Below, one piece after another: positions 25,151-46,773 of a stretch of 64,000 bases of DNA (position 1 is the stretch's first letter; every line of letters starts with the position of its first letter). Under the pieces are notes generated by a model. It was not told the origin of the DNA and ran no database searches. It saw only the letters and a list, made by a program, of their open reading frames with translations. Both the position numbers and the translations under genes were made by a program. The DNA comes from Anaeramoeba ignava BMAN (lineage: Eukaryota > Protista > Anaeramoebae), in contig JAPDFW010000135.1 of NCBI GenBank assembly GCA_028826165.1, positions 62,707 through 126,706 of the forward strand, given 5' to 3'.

Positions 25151-26925
25151 TTAATTTTGATTATTAAATTTGTTAATTAATAAATCAAATAAATTTGGAT
25201 TTGTTTGATTTAATTGAAAATAATCAATTCCAGTTTTAATTTCATCAATGATTTCTTGTGTAATTTGAATTTCATCTTTAATTTGATTTGAATAAATCCA
25301 ATATTCAAATATTTGAAATGATTTATTACTTAATTCACTATAATCTGTAACTTTATTAGATTTATCTTCAGTTACAGATAAAAACATTCCTCGATATAAT
25401 TCACTTCTCATTATTAATATTAATTTAGGAAATTTATATTGTTTTTCTTTTCTTTCAATTATAAAATCTTTTTCATTTTCATTTTCATTTAAATAAATTC
25501 TTTTCATTGTTTCTTCAATTTTTTCATTTGAATTTATAATTTCTTTAATTTCAGAATATAATTTTGGATTTATTATTCTGTTTGAATAAATCATTTCAAA
25601 TATTTGATTTGATTCTTTAATTGATTTTTTTGAAATAATTTCTTGAAGTTTTTCAATTTTGATTTTGATTTTGATCTTTTAATCTATATTTCAATATTAA
25701 TTTATGAGCTTTGATTATTTCTCCATTTTCGGTTTTAAATGAAATATCACAAAATTCTTTTCTTTCAAATAATTTTATCAAATCTTCTTCAAGATTGGAA
25801 AAAGGAGGAGGAGAATAATAAATAAATGAATTGTTAAATCCACAAGAAATATGATAATTAGGAATATTTTCATTAAATCTTAATTTAGGAAGTTCAATTT
25901 GAATTGGAATTGATTGCTTTAAATGACTATATCCAGTTCCTAATTGACCTGAATAATTATATCCAAATCCTATTAATTTCCCTTTGGAAGTTAAAATCAA
26001 AGTATGAGCATTTCCAACAGAAAAATCAAGAATATTATCATCATTTTCAAATAAAGATGATTTGATTTCAGTAAATTCATAAGTATTTTCATCTTTGCTA
26101 AGTCCATTAAATCCATAATTTCCACATGAATAAAGTTTTCTTTTTGGATTTTGATCTTGATTTTCATTTTCAATAAATGTTATTGAATGACCACCTCCAC
26201 ATTGAATATCAATTATTTTGCCTTTTGGAATATTTTGGATTTTGGTTAATTTTGTGATTTTTGTTTCTTGTTTTCTTGATTCTCCTAATCCAACTTGACC
26301 AAATCTATTATCGCCGCATCCAAATAATTCTTGATTTGAATTTAAAAGAAAAACACAATTTGAAGAGTTTCCTGAAAATATTTTAGAAACATTTTTCATC
26401 ATTAAAATTGGTTTTTGTGTATTTTTAAGTGTTTCAGAATCAAAACCAAGTTGACCAAATTGATTTGAACCAATTCCATAAACATTTTGATTTGAAGTTA
26501 ATAAGTAAATTGAATTTCTTCCAGAAACAACATCTTCGAATTATTCTATCATTTTTATCTTCAATTAATGATGAAATATTGATAAATTCATTTGGATTAT
26601 TTGGATTAATATCTAAACCTTTGGCAAATACATTTCCTTCTATTGTTAAAATAGCTTCATTGTGAACACCAACAGTTACTTTTTGAATATTTTCTTCAAT
26701 TTGAATTTTTGAAGGATTTTGTTTTGAATATTTTTCATTTAAATATTCTATTGCTTTTCCATTTTGAAAAAGGAAAATTGTTGAAAAATAACATGATGAA
26801 ATTTGTTTAATTTGTTTTTCATTTTCATTTTCAAATTTAAATTGAATTGGTTTTGTTATTTTTTCTGATTCATTTTTTATAAGTTTTGGTTCGTCATTTT
26901 TACCACAAAATAAACAATCATTCAT
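25151..26925 (-). CDS. RCC1-repeat propeller + tandem BTB protein, copy A (frameshifts ~26537 and ~25655)
   Basis: GxNxxGQLG and FSVGxxHTLIL repeats; BTB motifs EFCDISF..AHKLIL and FPKLILIMRSELYRGMF. Collinear with the intact copy 44931-46721. Confidence 0.85.
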
Positions 26926-30294: not shown

Positions 30295-32086
30295 TTAATT
30301 TTGATTATTAAATTTGTTAATTAATAAATCAAATAAATTTGGATTTGTTTGATTTAATTGAAAATAATCAATTCCAGTTTCTAATTCTTCAATAATTTCT
30401 TGTGTAATTTGAATTCCATTTTTGATTTGATTTGAATAAATCCAATATTCAAATATTTGAAATGATTTATTACTTAATTCACTATAATCTGTAACTTTAT
30501 TTGAAGTATCTTCTGTTACAGATAAAAACATTCCTCGATATAATTCACTTCTCATTATTAATATTAATTTAGGAAATTTATATTGTTTTTCTTTTCTTTC
30601 AATTATAAAATCTTTTTCATTTTCATTTTCATTTAAATAAATTCTTTTCATTGTTTCTTCTATTTTTTCATTGGAATTTATAATTTCTTTAATTTCTAAA
30701 TATAATTTTGGATTTATTAATTGTTTGAATAAATCATTTCAAATATTTGATTTGATTCTTTAATTGATTTTTTTGAAATAATTTCTTGAAGTTTTTCATT
30801 TTGATTTTGATTTTGATTTTGATTTTGATTTAATCTATATTTTAATATTAATTTATGAGCTTTGATTATTTCTCCATTTTTGGTTTTAAATGAAATATCA
30901 CAAAATTCTTTTCTTTGGAATAGTTTTATCAAATCTTCTTCAAGATTGGAAAAAGAAGGAGGAGAATAATAAATAAATGAATTGAAAGTTCCACAAGAAA
31001 GATGATAATTGGAAATATCTTCATTAAATCTTAATTTAGGGAGTTCAATTTGAATTGGAATTGATTGACTATTTGTATTTCCAGTTCCTAATTGACCTGA
31101 ATAATTATATCCAAATCCAATTAATTTTGAATTGGAAGTTAAAATCAAAGTATGAGAATTCCCAACAGAAAAATCAAGAATATTATCATCATTTTCAAAT
31201 AAAGATGATTTGATTTCAGTAAATTCATTTGTATTTTCATTACGATTTTTGCCAAGTCCATTAAATAGATAATCTCCACATGAATAAAGTTTTCTTTTTG
31301 GATTTTCATTTTCATTTTCATTTTCAATCAACATTATTGAATAATAAAATGAAGGTTTAATATCAATTATTTTGCCTTTTGGAATATTTTGGATTTTGGT
31401 TAATTTTCTTATATATGTTTCTTTTCTTCTTGATTCTCCTAATCCAAGTTGACCATAGAAATTTTCACCGCATCCAAATAATTCTTGATTTGAATTTAAA
31501 AGAAAAACGCAATCTGAAGAATCTCCTGAAAATATTTTAGAAACATTTTTCATCATTAAAATTGGTTTTTCTGTTTTTGGAAGTGTTTTATATTCAAAAC
31601 CAAGTTGACCATATTCATTTGAACCAATTCCATAAGCATTTTGATTTGAAGTTAATAAGTAAATTGAATTATTTCCAGAAACAACATCTTCAATTATTCT
31701 ATCATTTGTATCTTCAATTAATGATGAAATATTGATAAATTCTTTTGGATTATTTGGATTAATATCTTTTCCTTTTGCAAATACATTTCCTTCTATTGTT
31801 AAAATAGCTTCGTTTGCATAACCAACAGATACTTTTTGAATATTTTCTTCAATTTGGATTTCTTCAGGATTTGAATCATTTCCTCTTAAATATTCCATTG
31901 CTTTTCTATTTTTAAAAAGGAAAATTGTTGAAAAACCTCCTGATGAAATTTGTTTAATTTGTTTTTCATTTTCATTTTGATTTTCATTTTCAAATTTAAA
32001 TTGAATTGGTTTTGTTATTTTTTCTGGTTCATTTTTGATAAAAGAATTGGATAATTATTTAAACCAAAAAATAAAATTTCATTCAT
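30295..32086 (-). CDS. RCC1-repeat + tandem BTB protein, copy B (frameshifts ~32040 and ~30718)
   Basis: ATG at 32086 (MNEILFFG); collinear with copy D. Confidence 0.85.
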
Positions 32087-36214: not shown

Positions 36215-36427
36215 TTTTGGAAAGATGAAAAAAATGAAAGAAAAAAATGAATTTTAATTTTAATTTTAATTTTAATTTTGATTTTAATTTTAATTTTAAT
36301 TTTAATTTTAATTTTAATTTTAATTTTAATTTTAATTTTAATTTTGATTTTAATTTTAATTTTAATTTTGATTTTAATTTTAATTTTGATTTTAATTTTA
36401 ATTTTAATTTTGATTTTAATTTTGATA

Positions 36428-38219
36428 TTAATTTTGATTATTAAATTTTTTAATTAATAAATCAAATAAATTTGGATTTGTTTGATTTAATTGAAAATAA
36501 TCAATTCCAATTTTAATTTCATCAATAATTTCTTGTGTAATTTGAATTTCATTTTTGATTTGATTTGAATAAATCCAATATTCAAATATTTGAAATGATT
36601 TATTACTTAATTCACTATAATCTGTAACTTTATTAGAAGTATCTTCAGTTACAGATAAAAACATTCCTCGATATAATTCACTTCTCATTATTAATATTAA
36701 TTTAGGAAATTTATATTGTTTTTCTTTTCTTTCAATTATAAAATCTTTTTCATTTTCATTTTCATTTAAATAAATTCTTTTCATTGTTTCTTCAATTTTT
36801 TCATTGGAATTTATATTTTCTTTAATTTCAGAATATAATTTTGGATTTATATTCTATTTGAATAAATCATTTCAAATATTTGATTTGATTCTTTAATTGA
36901 TTTATTTGAAATAATTTCTTGAAGTTTTTCAATTTGATTTTGATTTTGATTTTGATTTTGATTTAATCTATATTTCAATATTAATTTATGAGCTTCAATT
37001 ATTTCTCCATTTTCTGTTTTAAATGAAATATCACAAAATTCTTTTCTTCTAAATAGTTTTATCAAATCTTCTTCAAGATTGGAAAAAGAAAGAGCAGAAT
37101 AATAAAAAAATGATTTTTCATTTCTACAAGAAATATGATAATTAGAAATATTTTCATTAAATCTTAATTTAGGAAGTTCAATTTGAATAGGAATTGATTG
37201 ACTATTTGTATCTCCAGTTCCTAATTGACCAAATTCATTATTCCCAAATCCAATTAATTTTGAATTAGAAGTTAAAATCAAAGTATGCAGATTTCCAACA
37301 GAAAAATCAAGAATATCATCATCATTTTCAAATAAAGATGATTTGATTTCAGTAAATTCATAAGTATCTTCATTTTTGCCAAGTCCATTGTATAGAGAAT
37401 ATCCACATGAATAAAGTTTTCTTTTTGGATTTTCATTTTCATTTTCATTTTCAATCAACATTATTGAAAAATTAAATCCAGATTGAATATCAATTATTTT
37501 GCCTTTTGGAATATTTTGGATTTTGGTTAATTTTCTTATATATGTTTCTTTTTTTCTTGATTCTCCTAATCCAACTTGACCAGAATTATTATATCCACAT
37601 CCAAATAATTCTTGATTTTGAATTTAAAAGAAAAACATGATTTGAAGTATTTCCTGAAAATATTTTAGAAACATTTTTCATCATTAAAATTGGTTTTTCT
37701 GTTTCTTCAAGTGTTTCATAATCAAAACCAAGTTGATCATAGTGATTTGAACCAATTCCATAAGCATTTTGATTTGAACTTAATAAGTAAATTGAATTAT
37801 TTCCAGAAACAACATCTTCAATTATTCTATCATTTGTATCTTCAATTAATGATGAAATATTGATAAATTCATTTTGGATTTTTGGATTGATATTTCTTCC
37901 TTTGGCAAATACATTTCCTTCTATTGTTAAAATATTTTCATTTTCTTCACCAACAGTTACTTTTTGAATATTTTCTTCAATTTGGATTTTTATCAGGATT
38001 TTGTTTTGAATCTTCTTGATCTAAATATTCTATTGCTTTTCCATTTTTAAAAAGGAAAATTGTTGATAAATAACTTGATGAAATTTGTTTAATTTGTTTT
38101 TCATTTTCATTTTCATTTTCATTTTCAAATTTAAATTGAATTGGCTTTGTTATTTTTTCTGGTTCATTTTCATCCAAAACAACAAAATCATTTCTTCCAA
38201 AAAATAAACAATCATTCAT
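36428..38219 (-). CDS. RCC1-repeat + tandem BTB protein, copy C (frameshifts ~37985, ~37617, ~36848)
   Basis: Collinear with copy D across three 1-nt indels. Confidence 0.85.
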
Positions 38220-38292: not shown

Positions 38293-41200
38293 TTAAAAAT
38301 ATTTTTGTGTTTCCAATTCTTTTAATCGATTATTAAATTGATTAAATTGACTTAATTGATAAAAATCTTCTGTGTCATTTAATTCTTGAATAATTTTTGT
38401 TAAATCTTTTTTTAAATTTAAATTTAAATTTAAATCAAATTCTCCAAAATAAAAGTAATGAATAAGTTGTTCAAGACTTCCTTTACTTTTCCCACTATAA
38501 TCTTTAACAGAATTTGAATCATCTTGAACATTCAAAAACATTTGTCTAAATAAATTTGATCTTAAAATTAAAATCAATTTATGAACTTTGATTTCTGAAG
38601 AATCATCACAAATAATTTTGAAATCTTTTTCAATCTTTTTCCAAATAAAGATTAACAAAATCTTTTTAATTCCTGATTCATCTTTTTGTTTCCGGATCCA
38701 ATTTTTATCAAATCCTAATTCTTGTGAAATGATTTGAATTTTCTTTTCATTTTGAATTTGGGAAAAATTATCTGAACTTGTTAAATATTCTTGAAATAAT
38801 TTTTGAGAATCAGAATCATCAAAATTAAATTGATTTGATTTCCAATAAAATGAAAAGAATGGATGTTTTGACTCAATTAAATTCCATTCATCTTTTTGAA
38901 ATTGATTCAAATCAAGATTAGAAATTGGATCAATCATTCCAGTATAAATGAAAATCAAGAAAGGAATAACTTGATTTTCAGGTTTTGATGAGAAAACTTC
39001 TTGAATTTTTGTTAAAATTGAATGATCATTATCAAATCTCATCAATAAAATTAGTTTATGAACTTTGATATTTCCATCTAAATGATTTATTGTGAAATCA
39101 CAAAATTCTTGTCTCAAAAATAGATTAAATAAATCAATTTGCAAATTTTTGGAAAGAATTGGGAATTCAAATCTGAAAAATTCACTTTCAATAAATGGAC
39201 AAGGTTTATTTTCTCTAATATATCCAATTGCAAAATCTTGCATAATATCTTTTTCCTTAATTTGATTTGGGCTCAGTTCAGAAATTCCTGAATGTGATAA
39301 TGATATATTATAAAGCAAATTAGAAGAGATAATACTGATAAATTTTGAATTCTTTGTGGATAAAATAACGAATCTATCAGTTTCCAAAGGAGTAATAACT
39401 GAAGGAAGACTCCAGACAAATTGAATTTTATCTCCAACAATTTTTCTATTCAAAATTTTGATTCCCACAAAACTAGTTGGTTCAATTATGATTGGTGATT
39501 GACAAAGAATAATTTTAGAATAAGAATAAGAATAATATCCAATAATAAATTCTTCCTCGATCATTCCACCTCCAATTTGTATTTTGATTTCTACTTCTCC
39601 TTTTTTTTCACATTTCTCATTTTTGTAATAAACTTGAAAATATTTTGGTGCTTCTTTTTCTTTAGATTGAAGTTGTGATTTAAATAAAATTATTTGATCA
39701 TTTTGATGAGGTTCATAATTATTTGATAATTCCCATGATACTTTTATTGTTTCTCCAATCTTTGTTTTTTCTGGAGATGATTTAATTATTCCTCCTTCTA
39801 ATGGAAGAACTTCAATTTCTTCACTTTTTGCAAAAGGTTTATATTTGTATTCACTTGTATAATATCTAAATTCAAATATTTGATTTTCTTCTGTAATATA
39901 ATTTCTAATATCAAATGTTAATTTTCCCTTTTTTTTATGCATTGGAATATATTGATAAGTTAAACCAGGAGTAGTTGTAGAATCTTTCAAAAATAAAGCA
40001 ATACGACCGAAATAATTTGCTTGATAATATTCAGGTATCTCCCATTCAACATCAATTAATTCTCCAAATTTAATTTCATTTTTGGAAACTGATAATTTGA
40101 AATCTTTTCTATTAATCTCTTTCACTTTAATTTCTTCACTTTTCATTAATGATATTCTTCCATAAAATTTAATATATCTAAATTCAAATATTTGATTCTC
40201 ATCTTTAATATATTCATTAATATCAAATGTAAATTTTCCTTTTCTTGCTAAATTTGAATTATCTTTAATAATTAAAGAGTTATCAATTCGAGGAAATTTC
40301 AAAAATAAAACAATCCGATCTCCATGAATTGGCTGATAATATTCAGGTAATTCCCATTCAACATCAATTGATTCTCCAAATTTAATTTCATTTTTGGAAA
40401 CTAATAATTTGAAATCTTTTTTATCAAATTCTTTCACTTTAATTTCTTCACTTTTTGTTATTGGGTTTTTTTGATCTTTTGGATAATATCTAAATTCAAA
40501 TATTTGATTTTCTTCTGTAATATAATTTCCAATATCAAGTGTAAATATTCCTTTTTTTGCTAAATTTGAAGTAAATTTCCTAAATAAATAATTATTGATT
40601 GGAGAATCTTTCAAAAATAAACCAATCCAATCTTGTTTATTTGAATGATAATATTCAGGAAATTCCCATTCAACATCAATTGATTCTCCAAATTTAATTT
40701 CATTTTTGGAAACTAATAATTTGAAATTTTTTTTATCAAATTCTTTCACTTTAATTTCTTCACTTTTTGCTATTGGGTTTTTTTGATCTTTTGGATAATA
40801 TCTAAATTCAAATATTTGATTTTCTTCTGTAATATAATTTCCAATATCAAATCTTAATATTCCTTTTTTTGTTAAATTTGAAGTATTTTTGTCAACTAAA
40901 GAATTATTGAATGGAGAATCTTTCAAAAATAAACCAATCCAATCTTGTTCATTTGATTGATAATATTCAGGAAATTCCCATTTAACATCAATTGATTCTC
41001 CATATTTAATTTCATTTTTGGAAACTAATAATTTAAAGATTTTAAATTCATCAACTCCAAAATGAGAAGAAGTAAACAATACTTTTTTTTCGTTTGAAGT
41101 TTTGAGATGAGAAATGTATTTAACAATAAATAATTGGGCTTCATTTTCATTTGTATTTTCCTTTTTCAAATCATCATCCAATTTGAATTCAATCATTCCA

Positions 41201-42363
41201 ATTCTTGAAACTCTATCATTATGTTTTTCTATCAAAGGTTTTTGTGATAAATCATTTAAATTTGAATGAGAATCATAATAAAAAAGTGAAATTGAATCTG
41301 AAATGTTTGGTTTGTATTCATCAGGTAATTTGAATTGAATTTGAATTGGTAAACCAAATGTAGGTCTTTTTGCTATAATTTCAATTCCATTATTTTCCAA
41401 GAATTGGATTTGGAATGGTTTGCTGACACATTGGCTTTTATCATCACATGAAAAAAATCTAAATTGTAAATTGTCAAGAAAATTAATTGTTTGATAATCT
41501 TTTGTTTGGAAAATAATTGAATCTTTTCTATTTGTTTGATGAATATATCTTATTTCAATATATTGTGAACTTATTGAGTTTTCATAAAATAATCCAATCC
41601 GACTTGTTTCAGATATCTCAAAATCTTCAGGAAACTCCCATGAAACTTCAATGGATTCTCCAAATAAAAACTTTTCTTTAGAGAGAATAAGATGATTTTC
41701 TGGAATTTTGGATTTAATAATAAAAGGTTCACTTTCTGCTATTGTGTCTTCATTAACTGCAATGTATCTAATTACAAATTCTTCATTAGTTTCATTTCTC
41801 ATGCAAGATCCAGTATTAAAAGTTGCTGTTCCATTCATTGTTGCATTGTGATTAGCCACATAATCTAAATAAGAATTATAAAATGGTTCATCTTTGGGAA
41901 ATAAGCAAATCAAATCCCAACGTCTTAAAGAATAACCATCACAACCATCATCTCCATTGGGTATAAAATTAACAGGTAATTTCCAAGTTGTTTTAATTTC
42001 TTTTTCATTAATTTCATCAATAGTAATTATTTTTTCAAAAGGAATAATTTCAAAAACTTCAGAAACAAGAATTGATTTGGATTTATTTTCAGGTAAATAT
42101 CTAATTTGTAATTTGTTCTTCCATATTTCCACATAATTGACATTAAGAAATGTTGTTCCTTCTAATTGAGAATTTGAATTGTTTTTATAAGTAAAGTAAA
42201 TTTCATTTTTTTCTTTTGTAGCGTCAAAAAGTGCAATTTTATCATTTGATTTTGGTTGAAATTGTTCAGGAAGTTTCCATTCAACAATAATTTCATTTTG
42301 ATTTGTTAATTTAACTTTTTTGTTTTCATAATTTTTAACTTGAATAAAATATTTTTGTTCCAT
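38293..42363 (-). CDS. Array of about 10 SKICH/Ig-like domains + tandem BTB (1356 aa)
   Basis: Repeated V.W.......D(W/R)I.LF......F.FRY units; C-terminal LFLRQEFCDF..VHKLIL and VHKLILILRSNLFRQMF. Confidence 0.78.
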   Translation of the reverse strand: MEQKYFIQVKNYENKKVKLTNQNEIIVEWKLPEQFQPKSNDKIALFDATKEKNEIYFTYKNNSNSQLEGTTFLNVNYVEIWKNKLQIRYLPENKSKSILVSEVFEIIPFEKIITIDEINEKEIKTTWKLPVNFIPNGDDGCDGYSLRRWDLICLFPKDEPFYNSYLDYVANHNATMNGTATFNTGSCMRNETNEEFVIRYIAVNEDTIAESEPFIIKSKIPENHLILSKEKFLFGESIEVSWEFPEDFEISETSRIGLFYENSISSQYIEIRYIHQTNRKDSIIFQTKDYQTINFLDNLQFRFFSCDDKSQCVSKPFQIQFLENNGIEIIAKRPTFGLPIQIQFKLPDEYKPNISDSISLFYYDSHSNLNDLSQKPLIEKHNDRVSRIGMIEFKLDDDLKKENTNENEAQLFIVKYISHLKTSNEKKVLFTSSHFGVDEFKIFKLLVSKNEIKYGESIDVKWEFPEYYQSNEQDWIGLFLKDSPFNNSLVDKNTSNLTKKGILRFDIGNYITEENQIFEFRYYPKDQKNPIAKSEEIKVKEFDKKNFKLLVSKNEIKFGESIDVEWEFPEYYHSNKQDWIGLFLKDSPINNYLFRKFTSNLAKKGIFTLDIGNYITEENQIFEFRYYPKDQKNPITKSEEIKVKEFDKKDFKLLVSKNEIKFGESIDVEWELPEYYQPIHGDRIVLFLKFPRIDNSLIIKDNSNLARKGKFTFDINEYIKDENQIFEFRYIKFYGRISLMKSEEIKVKEINRKDFKLSVSKNEIKFGELIDVEWEIPEYYQANYFGRIALFLKDSTTTPGLTYQYIPMHKKKGKLTFDIRNYITEENQIFEFRYYTSEYKYKPFAKSEEIEVLPLEGGIIKSSPEKTKIGETIKVSWELSNNYEPHQNDQIILFKSQLQSKEKEAPKYFQVYYKNEKCEKKGEVEIKIQIGGGMIEEEFIIGYYSYSYSKIILCQSPIIIEPTSFVGIKILNRKIVGDKIQFVWSLPSVITPLETDRFVILSTKNSKFISIISSNLLYNISLSHSGISELSPNQIKEKDIMQDFAIGYIRENKPCPFIESEFFRFEFPILSKNLQIDLFNLFLRQEFCDFTINHLDGNIKVHKLILLMRFDNDHSILTKIQEVFSSKPENQVIPFLIFIYTGMIDPISNLDLNQFQKDEWNLIESKHPFFSFYWKSNQFNFDDSDSQKLFQEYLTSSDNFSQIQNEKKIQIISQELGFDKNWIRKQKDESGIKKILLIFIWKKIEKDFKIICDDSSEIKVHKLILILRSNLFRQMFLNVQDDSNSVKDYSGKSKGSLEQLIHYFYFGEFDLNLNLNLKKDLTKIIQELNDTEDFYQLSQFNQFNNRLKELETQKYF
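39800..41037 (-). repeat. Four in-frame ~312-bp tandem repeats (104 aa Ig-like domains)
   Basis: FKL.VSKNEIK.GE.IDV.W starts at ~41037, ~40725, ~40413 and ~40101. Confidence 0.92.
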
Positions 42364-42404
42364 TTTGAAATGAAAAAAATGAAAATTAATTTTTGCTTTT
42401 CAAA

Positions 42405-42731
42405 AATGAAAAAGATTTTATAATTGAAAGAAAAGAAAAACAATATAAATTTCCTAAATTGATATTAATAATGAGAAGTGAATTATATCGAGGAATGTTT
42501 TTATCTGTAACAGAAGATAAATCTAATAAAGTTACAGATTATAGTGAATTAAGTAATAAATCATTTCAAATATTTGAATATTGGATTTATTCAAATCAAA
42601 TTAAAGATGAAATCCAAATTACACAAGAAATAATTAATGAAATTCAAATTGGAATTGATTATTTTCAATTAAATCAAACAAATCCAAATTTATTTGATTT
42701 ATTAATTAAAAAATTTAAAAATCAAAATTAA
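42405..42731 (+). pseudogene. Inverted 3' fragment (second BTB) of an RCC1-BTB gene
   Basis: NEKDFIIERKEKQYKFPKLILIMRSELY...KNQN*; no ATG start; opposite orientation to the other copies. Confidence 0.85.
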
Positions 42732-42773: not shown

Positions 42774-43514
42774 ATGGATAATAATAATAATAACCAAACT
42801 GAAATTGTCGAGATTTACAAAAAGGAAAACCAAGATTTAAAAAAGGAAATCGAAGATTTAAAAAGGGAAATTGAGAAAATGAAACCAGTTTTTGATAAGT
42901 ATCGAGAACAATATCAAAAAGATTTGGAATATCAAAAACAAATAAAAGAATTGAGAAAACCATTTTCAAATTCGGAAATTATTCAAGATATTGAATATAT
43001 CCAGACATTAAAAGAATGGATAAATGATAATGATTTCTTTTCCAAAATGAATTTGGGATTTTCAGCAAAAAAAGATGGATTTTCTGCTCAAAATTGGCAT
43101 AAAGCAGTTGATAATAAAGGAAAAACATTAGTTATTATTAAAACAAAAGATAATTTTATTTTTGGAGGATTTACTCAAGTTGGATGGCAAGGAAAGAAAG
43201 GATACATTAGTGATTCAAATGCATTTATTTTTTCATTAAGAAATGATAAAGGGGATAGAAATCCTCAAAAATTTACAATTAAATATGGAAAAGAACAATA
43301 TGCAATTGTGGATGATTCGGAAAATGGACCTATTTTTGGATATTCTTGGAGGGATTGGAATTTAAAATCTAATTTACAACCTGGTTATTCAAATTTTGGA
43401 GAAAGTTACAATCTCCCTAAAGGAATTAAATATGGAACAGATCTCGCACAAACTTATTTATCTGGTTCTTATACTTCATCTGTCGTTGTTGAACTTGAGA
43501 CTTATTTCATTTAA
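42774..43514 (+). CDS. Coiled-coil + TLDc protein (BTB-less relative of 28200-29768)
   Basis: Shares MDNNNNNQ.E, EKMKPVFD and EWINDNDFFSKM with that gene; TLDc motifs. Confidence 0.88.
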   Translation: MDNNNNNQTEIVEIYKKENQDLKKEIEDLKREIEKMKPVFDKYREQYQKDLEYQKQIKELRKPFSNSEIIQDIEYIQTLKEWINDNDFFSKMNLGFSAKKDGFSAQNWHKAVDNKGKTLVIIKTKDNFIFGGFTQVGWQGKKGYISDSNAFIFSLRNDKGDRNPQKFTIKYGKEQYAIVDDSENGPIFGYSWRDWNLKSNLQPGYSNFGESYNLPKGIKYGTDLAQTYLSGSYTSSVVVELETYFI

Positions 43515-44768: not shown

Positions 44769-44930
44769 TTTTTGGAAAGATGAAAAAAAATGAAAGAAAA
44801 AAATGAATTTTAAATTTTAATTTTAATTTTAATTTTAAATTTAATTTTAATTTTAATTTTAATTTTATTTTTAATTTTAATTTTAATTTTAATTTTAATT
44901 TTGATTTTAATTTTATTTTTAATTTTGATT

Positions 44931-46721
44931 TTAATTTTGATTATAATTTTGATTATTAAATTTTTTAATTAATAAATCAAATAAATTTGGATTTGTTTGA
45001 TTTAATTGAAAATAATCAATTCCAATTTTAATTTCATCAATAATTTCTTCTGTAATTTGGATTTCTTTTTTAATTTGATTTGAATAAATCCAATATTCAA
45101 ATATTTGAAATGATTTATTACTTAATTCACTATAATCTTTAACTTTATTAGAAGTATCTTCTGTTACAGATAAAAACATTCCTCGATATAATTCACTTCT
45201 CATTATTAATATTAATTTAGGAAATTTATATTGTTTTTCTTTTCTTTCAATTATAAAATCTTTTTCATTTTCATTTAAATAAATTCTTTTCATTGTTTCT
45301 TCAATTTTTTCATTTGAATTTATAATTTCTTTAATTTCAGAATATAATTTTTGATTTATTATTCTATTTGAATAAATCATTTCAAATATTTGATTTGATT
45401 CTTTAATTGATTTTTTTGAAATAATTTCTTGAAGTTTTTCAATTTGATTTTGATTTTGATTTTGATTTAATCTATATTTCAATATTAATTTATGAGCTTC
45501 AATTATTTCTCCATTTTTGGTTTTAAATGAAATATTACAAAATTCTTTTCTTCTAAATAATTTTATCAAATCTTCTTCAAGATTGGAAAAAGAAAGAGGA
45601 GAATAATAAAGAAATGAATTTAAATATCCACAAGAAAGATGATAATTGAAAATATTTTCATTAAATCTTAATTTAGGAAGTTCAATTTGAATTGGAATTA
45701 ATTGATTTATTGTATCTCCAGTTCCTAATTGGCCAAATTCATTATTTCCAAATCCAATTAATTTTGGATTGGAAGTTAAAATCAAACTATGCACATGTCC
45801 AACAGAAAAATCAAGAATATAATCATCATTTTCAAATAAAAATGATTTGATTTCAGTAAATTCATAAGTAAATTGATTTTTGCCAAGTCCATTAAATTGA
45901 TAATTTCCACATGAATAAAGTTTTCTTTTTGAATTTTCATTTTGATTTTCATTTTCAATCAACATTATTGAATGAGTATATCCACATTGAATATCAATTA
46001 TTTTGCCTTTTGGAATATTTTGGATTTTGGTTAATTTATCAATTTTTTCTTCTTCTTTTTTTGATTCTCCTAATCCAAGTTGACCAGAATTATTCCAACC
46101 GCATCCAAATAATTCTTGATTTGAATTTAAAAGAAAAACATGATTTGAAGAATTTCCTGAAAATATTTTAGAAACATTTTTCATCATTAAAATTGGTTTT
46201 TCTGTTTTTGGAAGTGTTTCAGAATCAAAACCAAGTTGATCATATTCATTTGAACCAATTCCATAAACTATATGATTTGAAGTTAATAAGTAAATTGAAT
46301 TAGCTCCAGAAACAATATCTTGAATTATTCTATCATTTGTATCTTCAATTAATGATGAAATATTGATAAATTCTTTTGTATTATTTGGATTAATATTTAT
46401 TCCTTTTGCAAATATATTTCCTTCTATTGTTAAAATAGCTTCATTTCCATAACCAACAGTTACTTTTTGAATATTTTCTTCAATTTGGATTTTTTGAGGA
46501 TTTTGTTTTGAATCTTCTTCATCTAAATATTCTATTGCTTTTCCATTTTTAAAAAGGAAAATTATTTCAAAATATCCTGTTGAAATTTGTTTAATTTGTT
46601 TTTCATTTTCATTTTCATTTTCATTTTCAAATTTAAATTGAATTGATTTTGTTATTTTATTTGGTTTATTTTTAAAAAATTTTGGATATTTATTTTTACC
46701 AAAAAATAAAATTTCATTCAT
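44931..46721 (-). CDS. RCC1-repeat + tandem BTB protein, copy D (intact, 596 aa)
   Basis: Uninterrupted ORF with RCC1 repeats and two BTB domains. Confidence 0.92.
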   Translation of the reverse strand: MNEILFFGKNKYPKFFKNKPNKITKSIQFKFENENENENEKQIKQISTGYFEIIFLFKNGKAIEYLDEEDSKQNPQKIQIEENIQKVTVGYGNEAILTIEGNIFAKGININPNNTKEFINISSLIEDTNDRIIQDIVSGANSIYLLTSNHIVYGIGSNEYDQLGFDSETLPKTEKPILMMKNVSKIFSGNSSNHVFLLNSNQELFGCGWNNSGQLGLGESKKEEEKIDKLTKIQNIPKGKIIDIQCGYTHSIMLIENENQNENSKRKLYSCGNYQFNGLGKNQFTYEFTEIKSFLFENDDYILDFSVGHVHSLILTSNPKLIGFGNNEFGQLGTGDTINQLIPIQIELPKLRFNENIFNYHLSCGYLNSFLYYSPLSFSNLEEDLIKLFRRKEFCNISFKTKNGEIIEAHKLILKYRLNQNQNQNQIEKLQEIISKKSIKESNQIFEMIYSNRIINQKLYSEIKEIINSNEKIEETMKRIYLNENEKDFIIERKEKQYKFPKLILIMRSELYRGMFLSVTEDTSNKVKDYSELSNKSFQIFEYWIYSNQIKKEIQITEEIIDEIKIGIDYFQLNQTNPNLFDLLIKKFNNQNYNQN

Positions 46722-46773
46722 TTTTGAAATGAAAAAAAATGAAAATTAATTTTTGCTTTTTTAATTTTAATTT

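What the first reader, a model, noticed from the sequence alone, without database searches (positions are those of the whole stretch)
38293..42363. Ig-like (SKICH) repeat array with CDR-like variable loops on the same BTB-BTB module
Seen: four 312-bp repeats keep a fixed framework (VSKNEIK.GE.IDV.WE.PEYY; ENQIFEFRY; KSEEI.V) but vary in three patches. Patch 1: QSNEQDWIG/HSNKQDWIG/QPIHGDRIV/QANYFGRIA. Patch 2: SPFNNSLVDKNTS/SPINNYLFRKFTS/PRIDNSLIIKDNS/STTTPGLTYQYIP. Patch 3: YPKDQKNPIA/YPKDQKNPIT/IKFYGRISLM/YTSEYKYKPFA. The C-terminus (DL..LF.R.EFCD; HKLIL; RS.L.R.MFL.V..D.SN.V.DYS) is homologous to that of the RCC1-BTB genes. Inference: a second, independent class of variable binding domain swapped onto a common ligase-adaptor module. 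SKICH domains are known from the xenophagy receptors NDP52 and TAX1BP1.
Basis: partly seen in the sequence, partly recalled or inferred. Interest (0 to 1): 0.8.

Follow-up and report, generated by a model that had tools for sequence, protein, structure and literature searches.

The report
SKICH-domain array on double-BTB adaptor
A gene of the anaerobic amoeba Anaeramoeba ignava joins ten Ig-like SKICH domains to a double-BTB tail that looks like a Cullin-3 ubiquitin-ligase adaptor; the loops of its four youngest repeats have diverged fast, but antibody-like adaptive variation is not proven.

Summary
ORF 38293-42363 (-) is an intact 1356-aa gene of Anaeramoeba ignava. It holds ten SKICH-type beta-sandwich domains, not four; the middle four are young 312-bp tandem copies. 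A double-BTB module follows, collinear with that of the neighbouring RCC1-BTB gene.

Variable columns cluster non-randomly (P<5e-5). They fall on the B-C, C-C'/C'/C'-E and F-G elements of a confident AlphaFold model whose best matches are the HECW2 N-domain and the NDP52/TAX1BP1 SKICH domains.

The 'CDR-like' reading is only partly supported:
- Structure-defined loops give omega 3.5 (P=2e-4), but only if framework and loops share one synonymous clock, i.e. no gene conversion.
- After the gene duplicated, loops run at about omega 1.2-1.3.
- In paralogues C57, C74 and C80 the repeats are homogeneous, patches included.
- The family has 7 loci, 4 of them intact.

Tandem SKICH arrays are widespread elsewhere, mostly on proteins that look secreted. 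The fusion to the BTB pair was seen only in A. ignava. The BTB tree shows one fusion per sensor class. Other agents of this scan noted RCC1-BTB and ankyrin-BTB swarms elsewhere in this genome. Verdict: a new domain architecture within a known kind (expanded BTB adaptors), of moderate interest.

The parts
38293..42363 (-). Whole gene: 1356-aa intact ORF with ten SKICH domains and a double BTB module
42022..42327 (-). SKICH domain 1 (aa 13-114)
   Evidence: Best Pfam SKICH stretch, aa 20-104; iterated HMM E=6e-29
41704..42018 (-). SKICH domain 2 (aa 116-220); its C'/C'-E segment differs between paralogues
41377..41694 (-). SKICH domain 3 (aa 224-329)
41038..41376 (-). SKICH domain 4 (aa 330-442), with a longer E-F insert
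40723..41034 (-). Repeat R5 (aa 444-547), near-canonical; this is the unit that was folded
40411..40722 (-). Repeat R6 (aa 548-651), 94% nt identity to R5; 17 of 18 differences are nonsynonymous
40099..40410 (-). Repeat R7 (aa 652-755); framework about 92% nt identical to R5, loops rewritten, DWIG Trp lost
39784..40098 (-). Repeat R8 (aa 756-860); one extra codon in the F-G loop, loops rewritten, DWIG Trp lost
39478..39783 (-). SKICH domain 9 (aa 861-962)
39163..39459 (-). SKICH domain 10 (aa 969-1067)
38833..39162 (-). BTB1 (aa 1068-1177), divergent
   Evidence: Alone it is below the Pfam cut-off (17.4 bits); the family profile hits the CP190 BTB at 3e-7; AF2 pLDDT 84-95 over most of it
38641..38832 (-). 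Inter-BTB linker: a disordered stretch followed by helices (aa 1178-1241)
   Evidence: pLDDT below 50 at module residues 111-131
38296..38640 (-). BTB2 (aa 1242-1356), closest to Cul3-adaptor BTB domains
   Evidence: Pfam BTB 1.7e-10; KBTBD4 4e-8, also KBTBD2, KLHL and SPOP
38521..38529 (-). V-Q-D (aa 1279-1281), aligned to the phi-x-E Cul3-contact motif of KBTBD4; D invariant and V nearly invariant (>=90%) in the BTB-pair family
38623..38697 (-). Stretch that reads as a compensated frameshift relative to paralogues C103 and C56, just before BTB2

Best explanation
This is a lineage-specific member of the very large double-BTB family of Anaeramoeba ignava. Its target-recognition or scaffold part is a string of ten SKICH-type Ig-like beta-sandwich domains.

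Shown: the architecture, the fold, the homology of the BTB pair, the youth of the four central repeats, and the concentration of change in the B-C, C-C'/C'/C'-E and F-G elements.

Inferred: BTB2 docks a Cullin-3-type ligase, possibly with BTB1 packed against it as a dimer-like pair within one chain. The SKICH array holds protein partners through the same edge and loop surfaces that NDP52 uses for RB1CC1 and NAP1, so that bound proteins are ubiquitinated.

The array grows by tandem duplication in its centre. New copies start near-canonical (R5, R6) and then diverge mainly in tolerant loops (R7, R8). The small family (7 loci, 4 intact) turns over by birth and death. The loop divergence is best read as episodic change in two repeats, possibly adaptive, and not as a standing hypervariable system.
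For: - Architecture: Pfam SKICH, BTB and HECW_N all above their cut-offs; ten domains by iterated HMM.
- Fold: AF2 pLDDT 88, pTM 0.82, seven strands. Top Foldseek matches are HECW2 N-domain 2LFE, NDP52 SKICH 3VVV/7EAA and TAX1BP1. NDP52 and TAX1BP1 are the only PDB matches to the sequence profile.
- BTB pair: collinear with the RCC1-BTB neighbour. 3285 first-look candidates in the genome, and all 135 scored were hits. BTB2 is nearest to KBTBD4, KBTBD2, KLHL and SPOP. V-Q-D aligns to phi-x-E and is conserved family-wide (D invariant, V >=90%). Cullin genes are present. The module has pTM 0.77 and its best whole-module matches are tethered POZ heterodimers 4U2M/4U2N.
- Constraint: BTB half omega about 0.2 against about 1.1 for the array. 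No stop codons although about 4 would be expected under free decay (P about 0.02).
- Loops: nonsynonymous events after the gene duplication number 48 in 475 loop sites against 23 in 583 other sites (P=1e-4), while synonymous events are even. Entropy peaks at C', C'-E, B-C and F-G. Structure-defined loops give omega 3.5 against 0.67 (P=2e-4) under a shared clock.
- Binding surfaces: RB1CC1 contacts of NDP52 (beta3-beta5 and their loops; Y69, T71, F72, Y97; PMC8363153) and part of the NAP1 contacts (V61-K64, V116, A119, P122; bioRxiv 10.1101/264085) map onto patch 2 and the end of patch 3 through the alignment.
- Birth and death: central repeat number is 4, 4, 4, 4, 3 and 2 in different paralogues; C144, C74 and C80 are interrupted.
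Against: - No Cul3 orthologue was singled out among the cullins, and no BACK or 3-box is detected.
- The contact motif ends in D, not E.
- BTB1 alone is below the Pfam cut-off.
- The window copy carries a frameshift-like scramble just before BTB2.
- No RNA run was available, so expression is unknown.
- The mapping to NDP52 contacts rests on a roughly 15%-identity alignment, and patch 1 has no counterpart there.
- An overall omega of about 1.1 in the array also fits simple relaxation of constraint.
Confidence: 0.6

Rival explanations
1. One reading: the SKICH loops are CDR-like specificity determinants under diversifying selection. The family would then be a second germline recognition repertoire that feeds targets, for example symbiont or pathogen proteins, to a common ligase module.
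For: - Structure-defined loops give omega 3.5, LRT P=2e-4.
- R5 versus R6: 17 nonsynonymous against 0-1 synonymous differences.
- The actin and BTB-fragment controls show omega 0.2-0.5 by the same method.
- B-C, C'-E and F-G lie at one end of the sandwich by topology.
- The hottest segment coincides with the RB1CC1-binding edge of NDP52.
- Four codons carry three different residues in three 95%-identical paralogues.
Against:
- Patch-only codon models give 0.6-2.4, and the best-fitting one gives 1.04.
- Conditional tests give P=0.10-0.18.
- Patches after the gene duplication run at omega about 1.1.
- Repeats within C57, C74 and C80 are homogeneous, patches included.
- There are only 7 loci, 3 of them interrupted.
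- R7 and R8 lost the hallmark SKICH Trp, which may mean drift away from the canonical domain.
- The C-C' loop lies at the opposite end from the other hot loops.
Confidence: 0.22
2. Concerted evolution without adaptive meaning. Gene conversion or unequal exchange among the 312-bp units keeps resetting the framework, synonymous sites included. Loops that have already diverged block or escape conversion. This would give a mosaic that mimics hypervariable patches.
For: - Framework dS is 0.04-0.17 against 0.2-0.4 in the patches for the same pairs.
- In C57, C74 and C80 the repeats cluster within their own gene (tree) and are near-identical, as expected from homogenisation or very recent expansion.
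- Central repeat number varies between paralogues.
- Change slowed to omega about 1 after the gene duplication.
Against: - R5 to R8 stay orthologous by position across WIN, C103 and C56, so no homogenisation has occurred since that split.
- The invariant framework segments are short (24 nt or less common to all four units), which is little homology for conversion.
- Patch dS from multi-hit codons is unreliable.
Confidence: 0.3
3. Not a ligase adaptor. The two BTB domains pack on each other as a closed pair within one chain that does not recruit a cullin, and the protein acts as a multivalent SKICH scaffold, for example for coiled-coil partners in membrane or autophagy-type trafficking.
For: - The best whole-module structural matches are tethered POZ heterodimers, and pTM is 0.77.
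- No BACK or 3-box is detected.
- The motif reads phi-x-D, not phi-x-E.
- SKICH domains of NDP52 and TAX1BP1 bind coiled coils of autophagy-initiation factors.
Against: - BTB2's nearest solved relatives by sequence and by fold are bona fide Cul3 adaptors.
- The motif position is conserved across the family (D invariant, V >=90%).
- The TM score to the tethered dimers is only 0.5-0.6, with rmsd about 10 A.
Confidence: 0.15
4. A decaying gene family: the copies are young segmental duplicates drifting towards pseudogenes, and loop change is simply where a beta-sandwich tolerates mutation first.
For: - Array omega is about 1.1.
- Three of seven loci are interrupted.
- The window copy has a frameshift-like scramble before BTB2.
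- Broken RCC1-BTB fragments flank the gene.
Against: - Three 4-kb frames remain open, although about 4 stop-creating changes are expected among 99 changes (P about 0.02).
- The BTB half is under clear constraint (omega about 0.2).
- Nonsynonymous change is non-uniform while synonymous change is uniform.
Confidence: 0.12

Closest known systems
SKICH domains of the autophagy receptors NDP52/CALCOCO2 and TAX1BP1 (Pfam PF17751; PDB 3VVV, 7EAA, 5Z7L, 4NLH)
   Same: Same seven-strand Ig-like beta-sandwich (TM 0.64-0.74). They are the only PDB matches to the sequence profile. The most variable segment here corresponds to the beta3-beta5 edge that binds RB1CC1 in NDP52.
   Different: Those proteins have a single N-terminal SKICH followed by coiled coil, LIR and zinc fingers. 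Here ten SKICH domains stand in tandem and are followed by two BTB domains. Identity is only 11-16%. R7, R8 and the outer domains lack the DWIG Trp.
N-terminal domain of the HECT ubiquitin ligases HECW1/HECW2 (Pfam PF16562; PDB 2LFE)
   Same: Top structural match (TM 0.73, 25% identity), with Pfam HECW_N above its cut-off. It is also a SKICH-like module attached to a ubiquitin ligase.
   Different: A single copy on a HECT enzyme, not an array on a BTB adaptor.
Expanded BTB substrate-adaptor families with fast-evolving recognition domains (MATH-BTB of nematodes and grasses; SPOP type)
   Same: A conserved BTB ligase-docking part joined to a variable recognition domain, with lineage-specific expansion and birth-and-death turnover. 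The grass expansion is described in PMC4091423. Adaptive evolution in such families is my recollection of Thomas 2006 (Genome Res); I did not read that paper here, it only surfaced through reference lists.
   Different: The recognition part is a ten-domain SKICH array, not one MATH domain. The BTB is doubled. The family has only 7 loci, and positive selection is not established.
RCC1-BTB and ankyrin-BTB double-BTB families of the same genome
   Same: Homologous, collinear BTB1-linker-BTB2 module (34-41% identity). Neighbours in the same segmental duplications.
   Different: The BTB pairs form three separate clades by sensor class (SKICH 99/97, RCC1 100/100, ANK 98/95). The SKICH fusion therefore arose once and is a small side branch.
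Tandem SKICH/HECW_N-like arrays in metagenomic proteins (GDSL lipases, subtilases, Fn3/PAP-containing proteins)
   Same: Same domain in 3-7 tandem copies; 485 cluster representatives; 59 of 61 scanned match Pfam SKICH.
   Different: About half start with a signal-peptide-like segment and carry hydrolase domains. None carries BTB. They look extracellular, whereas this protein has no signal peptide and ends in a cytosolic-type BTB tail.

Membership tests
SKICH domain (Pfam PF17751) | Score over the family's curated cut-off | tested here: met
   59.1 bits against a cut-off of 23.4, 5 stretches; all ten domains E<=1e-20 with an iterated family HMM
SKICH domain (Pfam PF17751) | Seven-strand Ig-like beta-sandwich superposable on solved SKICH domains | tested here: met
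   AF2 pLDDT 88, pTM 0.82; TM 0.73-0.74 to 3VVV and 7EAA
SKICH domain (Pfam PF17751) | Conserved D-W-I-G-(L/I)-(F/Y) strand-C motif | tested here: inconclusive
   Present in R5, R6 and all repeats of C57, C74 and C80. The Trp is replaced in R7, R8 and in domains 1-4, 9 and 10
SKICH domain (Pfam PF17751) | Binds coiled-coil partners (NAP1, RB1CC1) through sheet-edge and face surfaces | not testable with these tools
   Only a homology mapping of the contact residues was possible
BTB/POZ domain (Pfam PF00651) | Two BTB folds in tandem | tested here: met
   BTB2: Pfam 1.7e-10. BTB1: 17.4 bits alone (below cut-off), but the family profile hits the CP190 BTB at 3e-7, and AF2 gives a BTB-like alpha/beta unit at pLDDT 84-95
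Cullin-3 substrate adaptor (BTB type) | phi-x-E Cul3-contact motif in the alpha3-beta4 loop | tested here: inconclusive
   V-Q-D aligns to L-K-E of KBTBD4. D invariant and V nearly invariant (>=90%) in 26 family members. This is a conservative variant whose function is untested
Cullin-3 substrate adaptor (BTB type) | 3-box or BACK helices after the BTB | tested here: not met
   No BACK match at E<=5; only one C-terminal helix follows BTB2
Cullin-3 substrate adaptor (BTB type) | A Cul3 partner in the same genome and physical binding to it | tested here: inconclusive
   Cullin-family loci are present (18 matches, about 8 loci). Binding is not testable here
Diversifying recognition repertoire (CDR-like) | omega>1 at defined surface sites, robust to model and to recombination | tested here: inconclusive
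Structure-defined loops: 3.5 (P=2e-4) under a shared clock. Patch-only models: 0.6-2.4. After the gene duplication: about 1.1-1.3.
Diversifying recognition repertoire (CDR-like) | Many copies, each with different loops | tested here: not met
   7 loci, 4 intact. Repeats within C57, C74 and C80 carry the same loops
Diversifying recognition repertoire (CDR-like) | Variable positions form one contiguous exposed face | not testable with these tools
   Model coordinates are not exposed. By strand order, B-C, C'-E and F-G share the N-terminal end and C-C' lies at the other end

The most novel reading that the evidence does not exclude
The SKICH-array double-BTB genes are a young arm of an intracellular, germline-encoded recognition system in Anaeramoeba. 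Loop positions at the B-C/C'-E/F-G end of newly duplicated SKICH units are driven by positive selection to bind changing targets, such as proteins of the sulfate-reducing symbionts or of invaders. These targets are then marked through a Cullin-3 ligase. This would be an E3-coupled analogue of xenophagy-receptor SKICH function.
Probability: 0.15. Interest if true: 0.8.

Novelty: new variant of a known kind. Interest (0 to 1): 0.45.

Why it matters
BTB adaptors with fast-evolving recognition domains are a known way for eukaryotes to widen the target range of Cullin-3 ligases. Here the recognition part is a domain type known in eukaryotes from xenophagy receptors and HECW ligases, multiplied ten-fold and joined to a doubled BTB. 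I did not find this architecture outside A. ignava: not among 5.8 billion proteins by word search, and not among the best 147 of the 485 matches in a 1.84-billion-protein profile search. The genome paper does not mention it in its main text.

The host is an amoeba that keeps bacterial symbionts in a dedicated symbiosome. If the array binds symbiont or invader proteins, it would connect SKICH-based recognition to ubiquitination in a deep-branching lineage. As it stands, it adds one more sensor class to the very large double-BTB family of this genome. It also gives a compact case (four young repeats, three near-identical paralogues) for studying how tandem Ig-like domains diverge.

Tried and rejected
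1. Compensated frameshifts as the source of the patches: rejected. The codon alignment shows in-frame multi-nucleotide substitutions and a single 3-nt insertion in R8.
2. Nei-Gojobori dN/dS as proof of selection: not accepted on its own. It gave patch omega 2-4 and 17:0 for R5-R6, but composition bias had to be controlled. Controls in the same window gave 0.2-0.5. Conditioning on the observed change types left P=0.10-0.18.
3. IQ-TREE codon models on separate partitions: omega depends on the frequency model (0.6-2.4). On the whole-family tree it is 0.39, with saturated branches.
4. Rejected as evidence after a null simulation gave the same.
5. Laying public reads: only short-read contigs that mix the 95%-identical paralogues, and no RNA run. 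Uninformative about expression and about the frameshift-like stretch.
7. Looking for the family in the genome paper: no mention of BTB, SKICH or ubiquitin in the main text, and only unrelated PANTHER rows in the stored supplements.
8. Cassette shuffling of patches between paralogues: no patch of R7 or R8 has a close match in C57, C74 or C80 (20-43% identity).

Full report
**What is there.** The window is about 21% G+C. A whole-protein word search places it in Anaeramoeba ignava: all nine hits among 5.8 billion proteins are from that species, and the closest paralogue is annotated 'speckle-type POZ protein'. The finding's coordinates are exactly one uninterrupted ORF, 38293-42363 on the minus strand, 1356 aa. 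Tandem Repeats Finder reports a 312-bp period, 3.9 copies, 84% matches. Pfam gives SKICH (59.1 bits, cut-off 23.4, five stretches), HECW_N (41.9 bits, cut-off 26.7) and BTB (47 bits, two stretches).

An HMM built from the four repeats and iterated over the family finds ten SKICH-like domains tiling aa 13-1067, each with E between 1e-20 and 1e-38. The outer domains are only 17-29% identical to R5.

**Is the patch pattern real?** Yes.
- In the codon alignment the framework is almost invariant even at synonymous sites, while the patches carry several changes per codon. There are no frameshifts and only one 3-nt insertion, in R8.
- Variable columns are clustered far beyond chance: window-variance and adjacency permutation tests both give P<5e-5, and the longest run invariant in all four units is 24 nt (P=0.006).

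**Fold.**
- An alignment of 57 domains from the seven paralogous loci (A1) gave a confident AlphaFold model of R5: pLDDT 88, pTM 0.82, strands at residues 2-4, 14-20, 32-37, 47-50, 57-63, 74-80 and 94-96.
- The best Foldseek matches are the HECW2 N-terminal domain (2LFE, TM 0.73, 25% identity), NDP52 SKICH (3VVV, 7EAA; TM 0.73-0.74) and TAX1BP1 SKICH.
- The only PDB sequences matched by the domain profile are the NDP52 and TAX1BP1 SKICH domains.
- Across 22 central-type repeats the entropy is highest in C' (1.99 bits), C'-E (1.93), B-C (1.40), F-G (1.26) and C-C' (1.18), against 0.4-0.7 in strands B, C, F and G.
- Model coordinates are not exposed, so I could not measure whether the patches form one face. 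By strand order, B-C, C'-E and F-G lie at the N-terminal end of the sandwich and C-C' at the other. With the short linkers of this array, those two ends of neighbouring domains abut. This is inference from topology, not a measurement.

**Comparison with known SKICH interfaces.** In the NDP52-RB1CC1 complex the interface uses strands beta3, beta4 and beta5 and their connecting loops, with Y69, T71, F72 and Y97 (PMC8363153). NAP1 binds the opposite, four-stranded face through beta6, beta7 and loops, with V61-K64, Y104, Q106, C108, V116, A119 and P122 (bioRxiv 10.1101/264085). Through the alignment:
- the RB1CC1 contacts fall in the C-C'/C' segment (patch 2) and at R5 positions 65-66;
- the NAP1 contacts touch the start of patch 2 and the end of patch 3;
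- patch 1 has no counterpart.

The alignment is at about 15% identity, so this is a lead, not a test.

**Is it selection?** I tried several tests and report them all.
1. Nei-Gojobori gave patch omega 2-4, and 16.8 nonsynonymous against 0.2 synonymous differences for R5-R6. The actin pair and BTB fragments in the same window gave 0.19-0.41, so composition alone does not create the excess.
2. Conditioning on the observed types of nucleotide change, and counting synonymous steps generously, R5-R6 has omega about 4 but P=0.10. R5-R7 and R6-R7 have omega about 1.4-1.5, P=0.18.
3. Three intact paralogues (this gene, C103, C56; 95% identical) provide independent events that arose after the gene duplicated. 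Nonsynonymous events number 48 in 475 loop sites against 23 in 583 other sites (P=1e-4), whereas synonymous events are even (9 against 10, P=0.82). The BTB half runs at about 0.2.
4. IQ-TREE codon models on the patch partition alone give 0.60 to 2.38 depending on the frequency model. The best-fitting one gives 1.04.
5. However, a null simulation with uniform omega, followed by picking the 33 most variable codons, gives a median of 4.8. That result is circular and I discard it.
6. With classes defined only by the model's secondary structure, loops give omega 3.5 against 0.67 for the rest, LRT against 1 P=2e-4. This is the best evidence for positive selection. It assumes that framework and loops have the same age and mutation rate, that is, no gene conversion.

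**What weakens the CDR analogy.**
- In paralogues C57, C74 and C80 the central repeats are nearly identical within each gene, patches included. All are close to one canonical loop sequence, as are R5 and R6.
- Only R7 and R8 of the WIN/C103/C56 clade have rewritten loops, and they have lost the hallmark Trp of the D-W-I-G motif.
- No patch of R7 or R8 has a close match elsewhere in the family, so there is no cassette exchange.
- The repeats of C57, C74 and C80 cluster within their own gene in the tree. This means independent expansion or concerted evolution.
- The framework synonymous divergence between R5 and R7 (0.04) is barely above that between the paralogous genes (0.02-0.03). So either the loops of R7 changed in a burst just before the gene duplicated and then slowed, or the framework was homogenised by conversion. 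I cannot separate these two.
- Free decay is mildly disfavoured: about 4 stop-creating changes would be expected among 99 changes and none is seen (P about 0.02).

**The BTB half.**
- It aligns collinearly with the RCC1-BTB neighbour (44931-46721): BTB1 38% identity, E=2e-7; BTB2 38%, E=2e-11.
- In the genome (42.8 Mb) the module has 3285 first-look candidates, and all 135 scored were hits, in ORFs of very different lengths.
- The nearest relatives outside the SKICH genes are long ankyrin arrays on the same pair. Others carry kinase plus RCC1, or TLDc.
- A tree of 32 BTB pairs separates SKICH (99/97), RCC1 (100/100) and ankyrin (98/95) modules. Each sensor class was therefore fused once and then expanded. 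With three groups on an unrooted tree, the sister relation is undetermined.
- The family profile matches Cul3 adaptors with BTB2 (KBTBD4 4e-8, KBTBD2, KLHL3/22/26, SPOP) and the CP190 BTB with BTB1.
- The AF2 model of the module has pLDDT 78 and pTM 0.77, with a disordered stretch at module residues 111-131. Its best whole-module matches are the tethered Miz1-BCL6 and Miz1-Nac1 POZ heterodimers (TM 0.5-0.6, rmsd about 10 A). This suggests that the two BTBs pack like a BTB dimer within one chain; this is weak and inferred.
- The phi-x-E Cul3-contact motif of KBTBD4 (L-K-E) aligns to V-Q-D (aa 1279-1281; 38521-38529). The D is invariant and the V nearly invariant (>=90%) in 26 family members.
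- No BACK or 3-box is detected.
- Cullin genes exist in the genome, but I could not single out a Cul3 orthologue.

**Distribution.**
- The domain profile finds 485 cluster representatives among 1.84 billion proteins (131 at E<=1e-10), most with 3-7 copies.
- Of 61 scanned, 59 match Pfam SKICH and 53 match HECW_N. Partners are GDSL lipases (14), PAP-type Fn3 (12), subtilases (5) and other Ig-like modules.
- About half start with a signal-peptide-like segment, and none outside A. ignava carries the BTB pair.
- The nearest outside relative is an A. flamelloides protein with 6-7 SKICH domains and no BTB.
- Tandem SKICH arrays are thus an old, reusable module. The fusion to the double BTB is what is specific to A. 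ignava, as far as the best 150 matches show.

**Literature and earlier notes.** The genome paper (PMC11550330) reports extreme A+T content and many expanded families, but does not mention BTB, SKICH or ubiquitin in its main text or in the stored parts of its supplements beyond unrelated PANTHER rows. Only one paper in the library holds both 'SKICH domain' and 'BTB', and it is an unrelated review. Other agents of this scan have described an RCC1-BTB swarm and ankyrin/TLDc-BTB families elsewhere in the same genome. I used these as leads only; my own count is consistent with them.

**Reads.** Four DNA runs from two studies hold the locus, but as short contigs that mix the paralogues. No RNA run was offered.

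**Verdict.** The SKICH and BTB assignments and the shared module are confirmed. The adaptor function is plausible but untested. 'CDR-like' diversifying selection is possible (structure-defined loops omega 3.5) but not established, and it is not a general property of the family. This is a new domain architecture within the known kind 'expanded BTB adaptors with variable recognition domains'.

Noticed in passing
window 38623-38697 (-), aa 1223-1247: Relative to paralogues C103 and C56, the window copy reads as a compensated frameshift: homopolymer length differences of -1, then +1 and -3. About 12 residues just before BTB2 are scrambled. It could be real or an assembly error in A-runs; the short-read contigs could not decide.
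   Followed up: partly
window 25154-26540, 30298-32054, 36431-37623 (all -): Three other BTB-pair genes have BTB1 and BTB2 in two slightly overlapping ORFs that split at the inter-BTB linker. In 44934-46745 the pair is in one frame. These could be frameshifts in linker microsatellites, or short introns.
   Followed up: no
window 42390-42728 (+) and 36431-38219 (-): A lone BTB2 fragment lies in inverted orientation directly upstream of the gene's start. Broken RCC1-BTB pieces lie downstream. The gene sits in a field of decayed RCC1-BTB copies.
   Followed up: partly
L063 (C103), L064 (C56), L065 (C144): The paralogous loci also carry the divergent actin and RCC1-BTB neighbours. The SKICH-BTB gene therefore spread as part of a larger segmental duplication.
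   Followed up: partly
L063, C103 paralogue, aa 1007-1020 of the window numbering (domain 10): Seven amino-acid changes within 14 residues, unique to C103, in the C-C'/C' segment of domain 10. This is a local burst in an otherwise 95%-identical copy.
   Followed up: no
module aa 1067-1356 (38296-39165): AlphaFold packs BTB1 against BTB2 (pTM 0.77), and the best whole-module PDB matches are engineered single-chain POZ heterodimers (4U2M, 4U2N). The double BTB of this very large family may be a dimer-like pair within one chain.
   Followed up: partly
P0010 (Anaeramoeba flamelloides, 769 aa): Annotated as phosphatidylethanolamine N-methyltransferase, but Pfam finds only SKICH/HECW_N domains. The public name looks wrong.
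   Followed up: partly
P0011-P0156 (metagenomic proteins): A large, mostly unnamed class of apparently secreted proteins with 3-7 tandem SKICH-like domains attached to GDSL lipases, subtilases and PAP-type Fn3 domains. The SKICH fold seems to be far more common outside eukaryotic autophagy receptors than its name suggests.
   Followed up: partly
window 36250-36448 and 44806-44963: Long (AATTTT)n microsatellites, one of which is open as an 'NFNFNF' ORF, sit between the cassette genes.
   Followed up: no
window 42774-43514 (+): A coiled-coil plus TLDc-domain protein (Pfam TLD 7.9e-22) lies between the SKICH-BTB gene and the next actin copy.
   Followed up: no
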